Shown: positions 1 through 64,000 of the stretch, one piece after another
How the letters are laid out: every line of letters starts with the position of its first letter
Position numbering within the stretch: the first letter of the stretch is position 1
Assembly (NCBI RefSeq): GCF_031769215.1
Contig: NW_026782263.1
Location: 434,001-498,000 of the forward strand
Source of the DNA: Ylistrum balloti
Lineage: Eukaryota
Reading direction: 5' to 3'
Length of the DNA: 64,000 nt
Notes under the pieces: model-generated
Database searches by the model: none
The model's input: only the letters and a program-made list of their open reading frames with translations
Told to the model about the DNA's origin: nothing
Made by a program: the position numbers and the translations under genes

Positions 1-3000
1 ATAGGGTTGTTCGCTCGGATTGTGTAAATCTTTATATCGGAAGAATCCGTTAGATCTCGCCTGTCCGGTCTATCGGGTCTGTCCGGTTTATCGATTAAGC
101 TTGACACTACAATCATAAGATAGGAAATTTTAGTACATGCATATAGTTGCTAAGAGATAAATATGAAAAAGTGTGTAATTACCTGTTTATTCGTTACTTT
201 TCATGTACAGTGAAAAAAGTAATTTCATACGGATGTGGTATCTAATAAATTCGCAAAAATTGAGGGGGAAAAGCTAGGAAAATTAACTTAAGCATCATTT
301 ATCTATTTACAGTAAATCTAAACGATTGCTGAATAACAACTTCCATACCTTAAGGCAATAAATTTTTTCAAGATTTGTGCTATTTACACCGGGCGTATCA
401 TTTCTATGGTCGATATTTGGATATCAAAATGTACCAATTGAAATCTTCCAAGTTTTAATGCCTTGAAATTAATGTCAAATATTCTTTGCGATAACTCAGT
501 ATTGGCATTTATATATAATAAGTTAGATTCAATGTTTTTAAAACTCTTTCAATATGTTTTGTTATACGAAAGAACAAGGGTGTTTAATCGTTTTTTCCCT
601 CTCCCCATGAAACAAAATAAAGCAACAATATTAGGTGATGTACGCATAAGCTTACCAGTCATTAACACAGATTTTTTTTTCAAATTTTGATGAAAAGCAA
701 ACAAGTTTTCATGAATATATCATTCGTGTTTTGGTAAAATTCTGCAATGTTATAATTTGTATACCTTGTATTTCATAAAATTTGTTTCATGAGAAAAAAA
801 CAAAACTGCAGTTAAGCACAAAAGTCATACAATATTATGCAATAGCTTTCAATCTATTTGACAAAGACTGAGAGCAAACACTTCATAAAAAAAAAACGGA
901 AAACAAAACAATAAAAATCTTCAACCAACTAAAATTCCAAACTTTCACCGGGACATTTGTCAACTTTCTTAAGTCTCTATCCATTTTATTGTTTAATAAA
1001 AGCAAATTATTTATTATCATTTAGAATTATCTTTTTCTGATAAGAAACCCAATGCATCCTGATGAGCACGAATATAATGAAATACATCCGGGTTACTCAC
1101 ATAGCAATCTCTGTAAATCCAAATCCGAGGCCCTTCTGCGTAGTGATTGGCTAATTGTTGATGACGTCGACACAAGGACAACGACGCAAAACAATAAAAT
1201 CCTAGCCGACATGGCGCCTTGGTTATGTCTGGTCTGAAAAATAATGACATAAAGCATACATCAAATGGTCAGTATTGACCAATTTGGTCGTATCGTTGAT
1301 TGACCACAGGACGTAGCGAGCAGCGCTTGAGTGACACTTATTAATCTGTTTGCGCTACCTACAGCTAACCCTATACAAGTATGGACGTATGTATTACCCA
1401 ATACAAAATACGTCTTTGTATTGGTCAGTGTTTTATTACAATGTTTACACTTTATGTATAACTCTGTATATACCCCCCTCCTTAACTTAGACTGACCTTG
1501 AGGTTCCCTGACTATATGTTAGTACATACGTACCTAAGGTGTTGGTCATTAGAATTGTATCTACATGTAATCTGCTCTTTGACATTTCCTTTATGCTTAT
1601 CGTTTGCCTACTTTTGGTTTAGGTTACGACAATTCCGAGTTGAAGCTTCCCAACTTCCCAGGAAGACAACCCCGCCGTTCACATTATACTGACAACTGGC
1701 AGACCATCTGTTACAGTACAATTTTGAGCGTTAAAAATTGAGTAGTAGGTATCCTTTTTTAAAGATAATCTGTAATTTCTTGGATCACAAAAAAACGAAC
1801 ACTCAACTATAGGTCACCAGTGAGGCGATGTCAATGAAGAAGAAACAGTAGTACAGAAAGAAAAGAGGAAATTCTAAAATCAGTCTCCTCTAACGAATCA
1901 TGCTGAGATGTATCAGATACAATTCTGACAGCCTACCTGCAAGAATTTCATCTTTTGTAGATTTGGAGAACTAATTATCATTCATAACATATTGCAACAA
2001 TGAAATTAATTATTTTCCATAGCAAAATTTTCATTACGGCTAGAATAAAAATGTAAGTTTTCTTATAATAAAATATACCGTTCTTCTCTACGTTTGTAAA
2101 ATGGAAACAGCGACTAATTCGTTGCTAATTTCAGATAGAGCTCTAACGTGGCTATACCCTTGTATAACCACTTCATGTTGTAATACTTGATATTCTAGAT
2201 ATCGCTGACGGGGTTCATATCTGGTCGAGAGACAACTATTGTTTATATTTAAGACTACTTAAGACCAGGCGTAATTTATCAACAATAATCATTGTATTGA
2301 TAAAAACATTTAAATTAGAATTTTAAAAAGTGTGTTTTTCATTGTAAATTCAGATTTTTTTAACAGAAAGTATATATCTTGGTTATGCAAAAGATTTGTT
2401 TTTCATTTTTTTGTGACGATTTGCTACAATTTCGAAAAAAGCGAAAATCAGATCTCCGCGAAAATAACGGTGTTACAGTATATATGCTATCGAATAGACT
2501 ACCAATGAATATGAATTAGTATATTCACATCATTTTAGCGCCTTGTCAGGCTTAAACAAATTAGTGCAACTATGCATTTACGTATCCACACTCATTGTTG
2601 AACAACATGCAAAGACTGCATTCTACGCATTGATATTTAAGTGAATATTTTCCGGGCTAAAAAGTCCTAAAATAGTATTGCCTCTTAAAATATACGTTTA
2701 CAGAAAATATTTCTTGGCGATATTTTTGTCAATTTACATATGGTCGGTAGAGCTCGAATTCTTTATCATGCGATCATTTAAAAGTAATGTTAATTAATTA
2801 ACTTATTGATTTATACAAACTGTTCTGTTGCTATTTCTTGTTGTTTTTAGCAAGTATTGTAATAACTAAATCATTTATGTCAGTATTAGCACGCCATTAG
2901 TGTGTTTTAAGTCTTCAAGCGAACCAATGACGATGTCACAAAGACAATAACGATGAATAATAAGGTCACTCAAGAGCGTTACTTAGAGTCGTCATACAAA

Positions 3001-61979: not shown

Positions 61980-64000
61980 TTATTCGTCATCAGCCTTTCT
62001 CCTCTTCTCTGGTGGCTCATCCTCTGGTAACGCGTCCTCTGGTGGCTCATCTTCTGAAAATTTAACAAAAATAAAACAACATGCATCTCAAAAGACCAAC
62101 TTAAGTTGAACTCCAGTAATAGTTTTTATAATCTCAACATGGCATTTATTAAATCAAAGTTTGACAAACATCCATTGAACTGAATCTTCTTTATAAATAT
62201 ATTTATATAGGAAACCTATAATTGGTATAGAACAAAAGCATTACATGTTGTGTATAAACAAAATAAAGGGAATCACTAGACAAACTAACACCGAGAAGAT
62301 GCTCTTTTGTACAATGCAATAATGGAAACAGGTACATAGTAAATGCCAAATCCTATACTCTTAGATTTCATCACACTGACATTTTTTCACAACAAATAAG
62401 CTATGTATTTTTTCCAATGATTCATTTGTTACCAGGTATTGTTTTATTTATATATATTGTGAAACTGACCTGAAGACTGATGAGATTTCACAGTTGATGT
62501 CTTTCCATCACTCTTGAAAAGCAGGTGTTTAGGAAAATTGAAGGCCACACAATACATATCTTTGTTAGGGGCCACATTTCTTACAAACTTCAACTTGGCA
62601 TCATCTGGTAGTGACTCCCCAATGTTCTCTTCTACAAGGTCCTTGGCAGCTTGTCTTGTATCGGCTGCCTTTCCAAACACATAGCAGTGAACCAAAGGAA
62701 TAAGATGGTCTGGATAAGTGTCCTGATCACCAGCTCTGTCTGATAACAGACCAATGAATTCATCGAGAAATGTCACGGCTAATGCTGGTAAATTCATTAC
62801 AGCATACGTCTTGTGAACTCTCATATGACCTAAATCCCACAATCTAAGAAGTTCAGGTTTCATCACAGATGTTATGAAGTCTCTGCCATCCAAATTACTG
62901 CATTTCACTTTTGTTTTCACTTTGTTAAGGGCAAGGTTCTCTACTAAACTTTCATAAGAATGTGGGTTAAGGTCATTAGCAAACACATTTACACCCCTTC
63001 TTGCAGCTATAACTGCAAATGGTCCAACTCCAGCAAACACATCAAACATTAAATCTTGTTTTTCCAATTGTAGAGCTATCCTTGCATGTTCTGTACCTGT
63101 ATTAAGAAAATTTAAATATTGTATGAAGGATTGATTAATAAAATACTGAACCATTGATAACTTTACAAGGCCTCAGGTAATCAATTAAGGACAACAAATT
63201 GATGCAGTTTGATCTACAAATTTATTGCTGTAATTTGCATAAACTTTTAAATGACCAGGTATATATTCTAACTGTTTGAGAATTTAATATTACAATACAG
63301 TATATCTGTGCACAAAATTCTTGTTAAAACCAACAATAAGTTAGTACAATAATCAGCAGTTGTTCCAAACATTACAATTTGATAATTTCTGAACATCTTA
63401 TAGGTCTCATTTTAAATTTATAACCAAATAAACACTAAAAGTAATGACAGCACAAAGGGGTGGAGGAGTCCAAACGTCCTGTGGGTGGTGCTGGTAGGTA
63501 GATTTATCAGTAGAGGAGTTCAAACGTCCTGTGGGTGGTACTTGTAGGTAGGTATATTGATAGAGGAATCTGAGTTGGATACTGGAGTATTCTAATAGAG
63601 CTCCACAGATGATAGGTATCACAAGAAGATAAAGGATGGAACATCAATACCAGGGATTCTGTGATTTTGTAGGTTTTGTTGATTGACATGTTTCGGATGG
63701 CTATGCCAACCATCATCAGAACAATTTTACATCAAGAAAGAAACATTTAACAGCATGAGTTCATTAATGTTCTGTCATCACTTACAGTTACTATCTATTT
63801 TATCGTTTTTGTGTCCCTTTTCGTTGCATTTTTTAAAATTTTCAAAATACTTTTCTAATTGTTGAATAGATCTTGAATATAAATGTTAATTGAAAATTCA
63901 GTAAAAGATTTACCTAGCCTTGTATTCCAGTAGACTTTTGAAAAGTCAAATTTAAAAGAAGCTCCATTCTCTCTGACTGTTGTAATAGTGTCATCTTCAC
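61980..64000 (-). CDS. TRMT5: tRNA (guanine(37)-N1)-methyltransferase, 3' part; exons >=64000-63914, 63096-62470, 62053-61980
   Basis: Spliced reading: VRENGASFKFDFSKVYWNTRL|GTEH..DVFAGVGPFA..ANDLNPHSY..VMNLPA..VHCY..VRNVAPNKDMYC. Phase-1 GT-AG introns join in frame; the gene continues beyond the window. Confidence 0.95.
63460..63551. repeat. Imperfect 50-bp direct repeat (about 1.8 units) in the TRMT5 intron
   Basis: gaggagt.caaacgtcctgtgggtggt.ct.gtaggtag with units starting at 63460 and 63510. Confidence 0.9.
63679..63724 (-). ncRNA. Minimal type I hammerhead ribozyme motif
   Basis: On the - strand: TTGTT-CTGATGA-T-GGTTGGC-ATA-GCCATCC-GAAA-CATG-TC^AATCAA. Full catalytic core, 7-bp stem II with one mismatch, palindromic ACATGT stem III, GUC cleavage triplet, and 5-bp stem I with a 1-nt bulge. 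Confidence 0.75.

What the first reader, a model, noticed from the sequence alone, without database searches (positions are those of the whole stretch)
63679..63724. Sense-strand minimal hammerhead ribozyme inside an intron of the housekeeping gene TRMT5
All core nucleotides are present in order: CUGAUGA, one extra U, stem II one substitution from a perfect GGUUGGC/GCCAACC, GAAA, and GUC with predicted cleavage between 63685 and 63684. Helix III is the palindrome ACAUGU. That is the signature of minimal type I hammerheads of Penelope-like elements and retrozymes, which cleave efficiently as dimers. It lies in the 817-nt intron 63913-63097 in the same orientation as TRMT5, so every pre-mRNA would contain it. 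Possible outcomes are silent passenger, concentration-dependent cleavage in trans, or an exapted regulator.
Basis: partly seen in the sequence, partly recalled or inferred. Interest (0 to 1): 0.75.

Follow-up and report, generated by a model that had tools for sequence, protein, structure and literature searches.

The report
Penelope retrotransposon hammerhead relic in intron
The hammerhead ribozyme motif is real, but it is the tail of a front-truncated Penelope-like retrotransposon that landed in a TRMT5-like intron, an ordinary and probably inert passenger whose catalytic core is already mutated in other individuals.

Summary
Observation confirmed. On the minus strand, 63724-63679 reads helix I, CUGAUGA, an unpaired U, a 7-bp helix II with one U:U mismatch, GAAA, the palindrome ACAUGU, then C17. 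Predicted cleavage is 63685^63684, inside the GT-AG intron 63913-63097 of a TRM5/TYW2-type gene, in sense.

It is not chance. A descriptor scan finds 1 site in the window and 0 in 200 shuffles. The motif sits in a ~300-bp interspersed repeat with at least 147 genomic copies.

Across 46 distinct copies the core is conserved, while N7 and the extra nucleotide vary freely. Helix II is 90% paired, with compensatory changes at 6 of 7 pairs. Loop 3 changes CAUG to CUAG and stays palindromic. These are the published hallmarks of Penelope-like-element (PLE) minimal hammerheads.

Related variants lie 160-190 nt upstream of reverse transcriptase + GIY-YIG frames. Copies share 3' ends and show a ladder of 5' truncations.

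The window copy is a solo, ORF-less tail with weak helix I and no partner ribozyme in 65.3 kb. Locus-spanning contigs of three other runs (two studies) carry G5>A. It is most likely a decaying passenger.

Rfam RF00163 misses the family. The scan has already noted hammerhead/PLE families elsewhere in this genome. Low interest.

The parts
63443..63742 (-). About 300-bp 5'-truncated insertion of a Penelope-like-element 3' tail (pLTR-type sequence), in sense in the intron. The 5' boundary is about 63739-63742 and the 3' boundary about 63443-63454.
   Evidence: Own-genome BLAST shows homology over 63739..63454 at 74-88% identity. Pairwise extents of L060 (the window copy) run from -9 to +288 relative to 63731.
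63720..63724 (-). Helix I 5' strand, UUGUU. The three pairs next to the core are U-A, U-A and G.U, followed by a U/C mismatch and one more U-A.
   Evidence: Sequence. Family helix I is UUGUU/AACAA in one subfamily and only GUU/AAC in another. The inner three pairs are paired in 89-98% of copies and the outer two in 31-53%.
63713..63719 (-). Core C3 U4 G5 A6 U7 G8 A9 (CUGAUGA). G5 is 63717.
   Evidence: Among 46 distinct copies, C3 is kept in 44, U4 in 44, G5 in 46, A6 in 46, G8 in 44 and A9 in 45, while N7 is free (U 25, A 17, G 4). Contigs of other runs read A instead of G5 here (63717 C>T on the + strand).
63712..63712 (-). Unpaired nucleotide between A9 and G10.1, a hallmark of PLE minimal hammerheads.
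   Evidence: The column varies freely in the family: C 31, U 11, G 2, A 1. The feature is listed by Cervera & de la Pena 2014, PMC4209133.
63695..63711 (-). Helix II hairpin GGUUGGC-AUA-GCCAUCC: 7 bp, one U:U mismatch at 63709/63697, G10.1-C11.1 intact.
   Evidence: Family helix II is 90.4% paired, and 6 of 7 pairs show changes on both sides. PLE-linked variants have GGCAUAC/GUGUGCC and GCCUCUG/CAGAGGC.
63691..63694 (-). G12 A13 A14 A15.1 (GAAA).
   Evidence: In the family G12 is kept in 37 of 46, A13 in 46, A14 in 44 and A15.1 in 44.
63686..63691 (-). Palindrome ACAUGU. In a monomer this is only the A15.1-U16.1 pair plus a CAUG loop. A 6-bp helix III can form only between two copies.
   Evidence: Three family copies have ACUAGU, which is also self-complementary. 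The dimer model comes from PMC4209133.
63684..63685 (-). C17 (63685) and A1.1 (63684). The predicted scissile bond lies between them.
   Evidence: Follows from hammerhead numbering applied. Cleavage was not tested.
63680..63684 (-). Helix I 3' strand, AAUCA. The family consensus is AACNA; the C at 1.3 is U in this copy.
63463..63567 (-). 2.1 copies of a 50-nt tandem unit belonging to the element tail. The same unit forms arrays of more than 1.5 kb elsewhere in the genome.
   Evidence: TRF. Arrays on C66, C363, C189 and C103. The number of units is polymorphic at this locus: X2 and X5 have 54 letters in place of 103.
63097..63913 (-). 817-nt GT-AG intron of the TRM5/TYW2-type methyltransferase gene that hosts the insertion.
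   Evidence: A spliced contig in X6 removes 822 nt with a donor 5 nt upstream.
62857..63096 (-). Downstream exon stretch that encodes the TRM5/TYW2 methyltransferase domain.
   Evidence: PF02475, E 8e-16, profile positions 26-100. The best solved relatives are Trm5b 5yac and MJ0883 Trm5.
63914..64000 (-). Upstream exon. Its open frame continues to window-equivalent position 64124 in L021.
   Evidence: PF25133 E 2.7e-10, and PF02475 positions 1-22.

Best explanation
The motif is a genuine minimal type I hammerhead of the Penelope-like-element (PLE) class. It is carried by a ~300-bp, ORF-less, 5'-truncated copy of a PLE 3' tail (pLTR-type sequence) that inserted in sense into an intron of a TRM5-type gene.

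In the parent elements the ribozyme lies near the 3' end, and so also upstream of the ORF in partial tandems. It is built to pair with a second copy through its self-complementary ACAUGU, giving a two-site dimer that cuts after C17. That role is inferred from the literature and was not shown here.

In this intron the copy is alone. Its helix I is weakened and helix II carries a mismatch. It is evolving neutrally, with a G5>A allele seen in other runs. It is therefore most likely a silent passenger that is spliced out with the intron, with no regulatory role.
For: Family membership:
- BLAST to at least 40 other loci.
- A covariance model built here finds at least 147 hits among the 150 candidates scored.
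- 39 loci match a strict pattern, against 0 for the reversed control.

Structural constraint:
- The core is conserved while N7 and the extra nucleotide are free.
- Helix II is 90% paired, with 6 of 7 pairs changed on both sides, and 0 of 500 shuffles reach the observed covariation score.
- CAUG changes to CUAG and keeps the palindrome.

PLE link:
- L072 and L082 carry RVT_1 and GIY-YIG frames with a model-matching hammerhead 160-190 nt upstream on the same strand.
- L052's tail runs on into sequence resembling the L072 ORF leader.
- Copies show a ladder of 5' ends from -405 to +9 with fixed 3' ends.
- Inverted truncated copies lie alongside several copies, as drawn for PLEs in PMC8557442.
- All descriptor features of PMC4209133 are present.

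Passenger status:
- There is one hit only in the window and in L060, which reaches window-equivalent position 65231.
- G5>A, plus three further differences within 58 nt, occur in locus-spanning contigs of X1, X2 and X5.
- The hammerhead fold is predicted at -1.7 kcal/mol against -10.5 for a register-shifted hairpin that pairs G8 and A9.
- PLE hammerheads have low or protein-assisted activity in vitro (PMC4209133; PMC11167929).
Against: - Rfam RF00163 reports neither the window copy nor the best family copies at E<=10.
- No cleavage assay and no RNA reads were available, so the activity of the intact-core allele is unknown.
- The 3' pLTR of the ORF-bearing PLEs could not be fetched. The link therefore rests on upstream copies whose hammerheads are diverged (34-45 bits).
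- Most of the covariation separates a few subfamilies, so the number of independent events is small.
- The window allele keeps every core nucleotide.
Confidence: 0.85

Rival explanations
1. Exapted or consequential intronic ribozyme. The sense-strand hammerhead cleaves TRMT5 pre-mRNA, by pairing with another pre-mRNA or with transcripts of other family copies, possibly helped by PLE protein. This lowers or tunes TRMT5 expression.
For: The window allele has all core nucleotides, and G10.1-C11.1 and A15.1-U16.1 are intact. It is in sense, so it is transcribed with the gene. At least 147 family copies could supply ACAUGU partners. A PLE protein assists its hammerhead in vitro (PMC11167929).
Against: No partner lies in cis. 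Helix I has only three contiguous pairs next to the core, one of them G.U, and helix II has a U:U mismatch. A competing fold is predicted. G5>A is present in locus-spanning contigs of three other runs, so the core is not under constraint at this locus. Minimal PLE hammerheads cleave poorly even as dimers (PMC4209133). A spliced transcript exists.
Confidence: 0.04
2. Unit of a non-LTR retrozyme. This would be a small tandem repeat with a hammerhead that is excised and circularised into a circRNA.
For: Long subfamily copies carry a degenerate second hammerhead-like block about 290 nt upstream. L039 has two motifs 38 nt apart. A 2026 preprint argues that animal retrozymes derive from PLE pLTRs.
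Against: The window holds a single motif and no tandem unit. The motif is the minimal PLE type, not the canonical type I with loop-loop contacts, and RF00163 is silent. Related copies adjoin RT/GIY-YIG ORFs. No RNA data were available to show circles.
Confidence: 0.08
3. Chance resemblance, or a DNA-level hairpin of a DNA transposon (MITE or Helitron type) that only mimics a hammerhead.
For: Inverted partial copies flank some members. The internal tandem repeats recall bivalve Helitron-derived elements (my recollection, not tested). Rfam gives no hit.
Against: 0 of 200 shuffles give such a motif. The single-stranded core is conserved while only N7 and the extra nucleotide vary, which a DNA hairpin would not explain. 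The ladder of 5' truncations and the RT + GIY-YIG association also argue against it. Inverted truncated copies are a known PLE feature (PMC8557442).
Confidence: 0.03

Closest known systems
Minimal hammerheads (min-HHRs) of Penelope-like elements (Cervera & de la Pena 2014, PMC4209133)
   Same: CUGANGA...GAAA core. One unpaired nucleotide between A9 and G10.1. G10.1-C11.1 pair. Long helix II (7 bp). Short, poorly defined helix I. Self-complementary 15.x-16.x/loop 3, which implies dimers. Consensus families with compensatory changes. Mostly solitary dispersed copies from truncated PLEs, and some pairs on opposite strands.
   Different: A lineage-specific sequence family with helix III ACAUGU and loop 2 CUA. 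It carries a 45-50-nt tandem unit in the tail that has expanded into satellite arrays elsewhere. This copy has a U:U mismatch and a weakened helix I. RF00163 does not detect the family.
Canonical 45-nt tandem type I hammerheads of the same genome (Rfam RF00163 hits)
   Same: Type I topology, the same core, and a palindromic helix III (ACAGCUGU).
   Different: Those have a 4-bp helix II (GUCC/GGAC), no extra nucleotide, a 6-bp helix I, 45-nt head-to-tail arrays and scores of 34-42 bits. The window motif has none of these features.
Non-LTR retrozymes of metazoans (Cervera & de la Pena 2020, PMC7229834)
   Same: A hammerhead carried by a non-autonomous retroelement, a possible common origin with PLE pLTRs, and occurrence in molluscs.
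   Different: Retrozymes are 170-400-bp tandem units with canonical type I hammerheads and are expressed as circRNAs. Here there is a single truncated copy with a minimal motif, and no RNA evidence.
Conserved intronic hammerheads of amniotes (HH9/HH10; de la Pena & Garcia-Robles 2010, cited in PMC7229834)
   Same: A sense-strand hammerhead inside an intron of a protein-coding gene.
   Different: Those are single-copy, ultraconserved, canonical and active as monomers. This one is a repeat copy with a core polymorphism within the species.

Membership tests
Hammerhead ribozyme, type I | Conserved core C3 U4 G5 A6 N7 G8 A9 ... G12 A13 A14 ... A15.1-U16.1 H17 in the right order, with helix I open | tested here: met
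   Sequence. The core is conserved over 46 copies, with only N7 free.
Hammerhead ribozyme, type I | Three helices supported by covariation | tested here: inconclusive
   Helix II is strongly supported (6 of 7 pairs compensatory). Helix I has only 3-5 bp: the inner three pairs are well kept, there is one compensatory case (GUC/GAC in L082), and the outer two pairs are paired in 31-53% of copies. Helix III can form only between two copies, and its palindrome is kept through CAUG>CUAG.
Hammerhead ribozyme, type I | Match to Rfam RF00163 at or above the gathering score | tested here: not met
   No hammerhead hit at E<=10 in the window or in 8 loci holding the best family copies.
Hammerhead ribozyme, type I | Site-specific self-cleavage 3' of H17 | not testable with these tools
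   No RNA runs hold the locus. No assay was possible.
PLE minimal hammerhead (Cervera & de la Pena 2014) | [quoted passage not shown] | tested here: met
   U at 63712. Present in 45 of 46 copies and variable in identity.
PLE minimal hammerhead (Cervera & de la Pena 2014) | G10.1-C11.1 pair and an enlarged helix II (6-8 bp) | tested here: met
   The window has G63711-C63695 and a 7-bp helix. In the family the 21-37 pair is G-C in 32 of 44 copies.
PLE minimal hammerhead (Cervera & de la Pena 2014) | Palindromic 15.2-16.2 / loop 3 that allows dimers | tested here: met
   ACAUGU in 43 copies and ACUAGU in 3.
PLE minimal hammerhead (Cervera & de la Pena 2014) | Location in the terminal repeat (pLTR) of an element encoding RT + GIY-YIG | tested here: met
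   Met for related family members: L072 and L082 have RVT_1 + GIY-YIG frames with the motif 160-190 nt upstream, and L052 shows continuity into PLE leader-like sequence. The window copy itself is an ORF-less truncated tail. The 3' pLTRs of the ORF-bearing copies could not be fetched.
Non-LTR retrozyme | Head-to-tail tandem units of 170-400 bp, each with a canonical type I hammerhead | tested here: not met
   There is a single motif in the window and in adjoining sequence. The motif is not canonical.
Non-LTR retrozyme | Expression as small circular RNAs | not testable with these tools
   No RNA run is on record for the locus.
Conserved functional intronic hammerhead (HH9/HH10 type) | Core preserved at the locus among individuals and species | tested here: not met
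   Locus-spanning contigs of X1, X2 and X5 read G5>A and C>U in helix II. A cross-species comparison was not possible.

The most novel reading that the evidence does not exclude
The intact-core allele is cleaved in vivo when PLE protein or abundant family transcripts supply the missing dimer partner. TRMT5 pre-mRNA would then become allele-specifically sensitive to retrotransposon activity, and the G5>A allele would be a naturally occurring loss-of-cleavage control.
Probability: 0.03. Interest if true: 0.6.

Novelty: new member of a known kind. Interest (0 to 1): 0.15.

Why it matters
It matters little for gene regulation. This is one of at least 147 copies of a retrotransposon-borne ribozyme, and copies landing in introns are expected.

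There are three modest points of value:

1. It documents a PLE minimal-hammerhead family that the Rfam model does not detect. The covariation is clean, including preservation of the helix III palindrome, which supports the dimer model.

2. The locus offers a natural pair of alleles, G5 and A5, in a housekeeping gene intron. These could be used to test whether such solitary motifs ever cleave in vivo.

3. The element tail has seeded 45-50-nt satellite arrays, an example of satellite DNA arising from a PLE terminus.

Tried and rejected
- Rfam cmscan of the window (E<=10 on 62-64 kb, gathering threshold on all 64 kb) and of eight loci holding the best family copies gave no hammerhead family. I treated this as a limit of RF00163 for this variant, not as evidence against the motif.

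- Single-strand folding of 63670-63735 is unremarkable (z -0.75). Cofolding did not recover the hammerhead dimer as the minimum free energy structure for any copy. Nearest-neighbour folding cannot judge a ribozyme core, so this carries little weight.

The 3' ends of the ORF-bearing PLEs, orientation bias relative to genes, and more diverged copies were therefore not examined.

- Sequencing-run search found no RNA run on record, so cleavage ends, intron retention and expression could not be examined.

- I considered the Helitron/MITE idea, prompted by the internal tandem repeats and inverted neighbours. I dropped it after finding the 5'-truncation ladder and the RT/GIY-YIG link.

- I rejected the retrozyme reading for this copy because there are no tandem units.

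- I did not build or search a joined-exon model of the gene.

Full report
**1. The observation**

Read on the minus strand, the window has:
- UUGUU at 63724-63720
- CUGAUGA at 63719-63713
- U at 63712
- GGUUGGC at 63711-63705
- AUA at 63704-63702
- GCCAUCC at 63701-63695
- GAAA at 63694-63691
- CAUG, then U at 63686 and C at 63685
- AAUCA at 63684-63680

Every invariant hammerhead nucleotide is present and in order. Helix II has one U:U mismatch at 63709/63697. A15.1..U16.1 with the CAUG loop forms the self-complementary hexamer ACAUGU. The predicted scissile bond is 63685^63684.

The host intron is 63913..63097 (GT..AG, 817 nt). The upstream exon frame matches PF25133 and profile positions 1-22 of PF02475. 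The downstream exon matches PF02475 positions 26-100 (E 8e-16), and the nearest solved relatives are archaeal Trm5 proteins. The two domain halves are contiguous only across the 817-nt intron. I searched the exons separately and did not build a joined model.

A min-HHR descriptor scan finds exactly this one site in the window and none in 200 dinucleotide-preserving shuffles.

**2. It is a member of a repeat family**

BLAST of 63640-63780 and 63380-63800 against the window's own genome (648.5 Mb) finds dozens of copies at 74-88% identity. They cover 63739..~63454.

The last third of the element (63567-63463, 2.1 units of 50 nt) is a tandem unit. Elsewhere it forms arrays longer than 1.5 kb (C66, C363, C189, C103).

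I built a covariance model (R1) from 24 copies. It scores the window copy at 77 bits. It finds 147 hits at E<=0.01 among only 150 scored genome candidates, which is a lower bound. A strict consensus pattern with at most 1 mismatch hits 39 loci, against 0 for the reversed control.

**3. The family is under hammerhead-shaped constraint**

In 46 distinct copies:
- G5, A6 and A13 are invariant.
- C3, U4, G8, A9, A14, A15.1, U16.1 and C17 are kept in 44-45 copies.
- G12 is kept in 37.
- N7, the one core position that hammerheads leave free, is U 25 / A 17 / G 4.
- The extra nucleotide after A9 is C 31 / U 11 / G 2 / A 1.

Helix II is paired in 90.4% of cells, and 6 of its 7 pairs show changes on both sides. 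Two subfamilies have GGUUGGC/GCCAACC and GGCUAGC/GCUAGCC. More distant members have GGCAUAC/GUGUGCC and GCCUCUG/CAGAGGC. The observed covariation score exceeds all 500 shuffles and all slid controls.

Loop 3 changes from CAUG to CUAG in three copies, so ACAUGU becomes ACUAGU. This keeps the self-complementarity that a dimeric helix III needs.

Helix I is weak. It is UUGUU/AACAA in one subfamily and only GUU/AAC in another, with one compensatory GUC/GAC.

Most of the covariation separates a few subfamilies, so the number of independent events is small. Even so, several pairs changed compensatorily while the single-stranded core stayed fixed.

**4. What the element is**

Cervera & de la Pena 2014 (PMC4209133) define the minimal hammerheads of Penelope-like elements (PLEs) by these features:
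- a larger helix II (6-8 bp)
- a short helix I with an ill-defined loop
- an unpaired nucleotide between 9 and 10.1
- a conserved G10.1-C11.1
- palindromic 15.2-16.2 / loop 3, implying dimers
- genome-specific consensus families rich in compensatory changes
- mostly solitary copies from truncated PLEs
- some pairs 100-700 bp apart on opposite strands

Every one of these is seen here.

I then tied the family to PLE coding sequence. L041 carries a PLE-type RT fragment beside a copy. Searching the genome with that fragment gave loci with long frames. In two of them, L072 and L082, Pfam finds RVT_1 followed by GIY-YIG. In both, R1 finds a hammerhead 160-190 nt upstream of the frames on the same strand.

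The tail of a subfamily copy (L052) continues past the family's usual 3' end into sequence similar to the L072 ORF leader. This is what a pLTR followed by an element body should look like.

Copies share 3' ends. Some end after 'CCATCCTTTATT' at +106..111. Others end after one or more 45-50-nt units plus 'ACTCCTCCACCTCTTTTTATTTTCC'. Their 5' ends form a ladder from -405 to +9, the signature of abortive target-primed reverse transcription.

Several loci have an inverted truncated copy alongside, as drawn for PLEs by Craig et al. 2021 (PMC8557442).

The window copy runs from about 63742 to about 63443. It starts only ~22 nt before CUGA and has no ORF. It is a solo, front-truncated PLE tail.

**5. 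Is this copy likely to work?**

Shown here:
- There is only one R1 hit in the 64-kb window and in the adjoining 1.2 kb, and there are no Rfam hammerheads. No cis partner for the obligatory helix III dimer was found. The part of the gene beyond window-equivalent position ~65231 was not seen.
- Relative to the family consensus, helix I has lost its G-C pair (now G.U). Helix II carries the U:U mismatch typical of its small subfamily.

Predicted:
- The hammerhead secondary structure is worth -1.7 kcal/mol, against -10.5 for a register-shifted hairpin that pairs G8 and A9. This is weak evidence.

Shown in other runs:
- Contigs of three other DNA runs from two studies span the unique flanks and carry the insertion.
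- They differ from the window at 63717 (G5>A on the RNA strand), 63699 (helix II G-C to G.U), 63726 and 63669.
- Two of them have one tandem unit fewer.
- G5 is a catalytic-core position. That its mutation abolishes cleavage is established hammerhead biochemistry, from my own knowledge.
- The window allele matches the family consensus at these sites, so the other haplotype is the derived one.
- A core that is polymorphic within the species is not under purifying selection at this locus.

From the literature:
- Minimal PLE hammerheads do not cleave as monomers and cleave poorly as dimers in vitro (PMC4209133).
- A lizard PLE hammerhead needed its own protein, was dispensable for insertion in vitro, and left no detectable read ends in RNA-seq data (PMC11167929).

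**6. Splicing**

One short contig of run X6 joins 63095|63918 with a 3-letter ambiguity. The only near-canonical reading is a GC donor at 63918 with the acceptor at 63097, giving 822 nt. That is 5 nt more than the frame-preserving GT-AG intron, so this form shifts the TRM5 frame. It shows that the intron, with the ribozyme inside, is removed. It may represent a minor unproductive isoform. It rests on one contig at depth 3, from a run of uncertain kind.

**7. Comparison and novelty**

The motif works like, and passes the tests for, a PLE minimal hammerhead. It fails the tests for three other classes:
- It is not a retrozyme unit: no tandem and no canonical motif.
- It is not a conserved intronic hammerhead: the core is polymorphic.
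- It is not a match to RF00163.

The same genome also has canonical 45-nt tandem type I hammerheads that RF00163 does find, so two hammerhead lineages coexist.

Earlier notes of this scan had already flagged hammerhead/PLE families elsewhere in this genome. One follow-up calls the organism a scallop, which I did not verify.

The finding is a new member of a known kind, in an unremarkable place.

**8. Limits**

- No RNA data and no cleavage assay were available.
- No related genomes were available for the orthologous intron.

Noticed in passing
window 63095|63918 (run X6 contig): A spliced contig removes 822 nt. This is consistent with a GC donor at 63918, 5 nt upstream of the frame-preserving GT donor at 63913, and it would shift the TRM5 reading frame. 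It may be a minor unproductive isoform. It rests on one contig at depth 3.
   Followed up: partly
window 63463-63567; arrays at G000 C66:298.1-299.8 kb, C363:379.3-381.8 kb, C189:1151.1-1153.6 kb, C103:855.7-858.6 kb: The 45-50-nt tandem unit in the PLE tail has expanded into arrays of more than 1.5 kb elsewhere, so a satellite has apparently arisen from a retrotransposon terminus. The number of units is also polymorphic at the TRMT5 locus: X2 and X5 have 54 letters in place of 103.
   Followed up: partly
L044, L061, L066, L007, L022, L023, L029 (5' ends at +2..+9 of the 61-nt model): An unexpectedly large share of copies begin within a few nucleotides of the 5' edge of the hammerhead (GGUU|CUGA), rather than at random truncation points. 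No explanation was tested. A reverse-transcriptase stop at the folded ribozyme is one idea.
   Followed up: no
L053, L057, L069 and other long subfamily copies, about 290 nt upstream of the hammerhead: A degenerate second hammerhead-like block (CCAAUGA-CGGCUAGC-CUA-GCUGGUC-UCAAAGC) lies inside the pLTR-type sequence. This suggests an old tandem duplication of the ribozyme module. Other scan notes on this genome mention cores 290-343 nt apart.
   Followed up: no
L039:1451-1549: Two hammerhead motifs sit head to tail only 38 nt apart. The cleavage site of the first abuts the CUGAUGA of the second. This is a natural tandem dimer of this family.
   Followed up: no
G000 C874:485.75-485.98 kb, C348:515.5-516.0 kb, C645:1052.3-1052.5 kb (L011-L020): Canonical type I hammerheads (GCAUCA-CUGACGA-GUCC..GGAC-GAAACAGCUGUA) occur in 45-nt head-to-tail arrays at 34-42 bits on RF00163. 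They form a second hammerhead lineage, distinct from the one in the window.
   Followed up: partly
L065:1557-3060: One family copy is cut off at +65 by sequence encoding a LINE-type reverse transcriptase (motif ...DFQKAFDTVPH...). This is a nested insertion.
   Followed up: no
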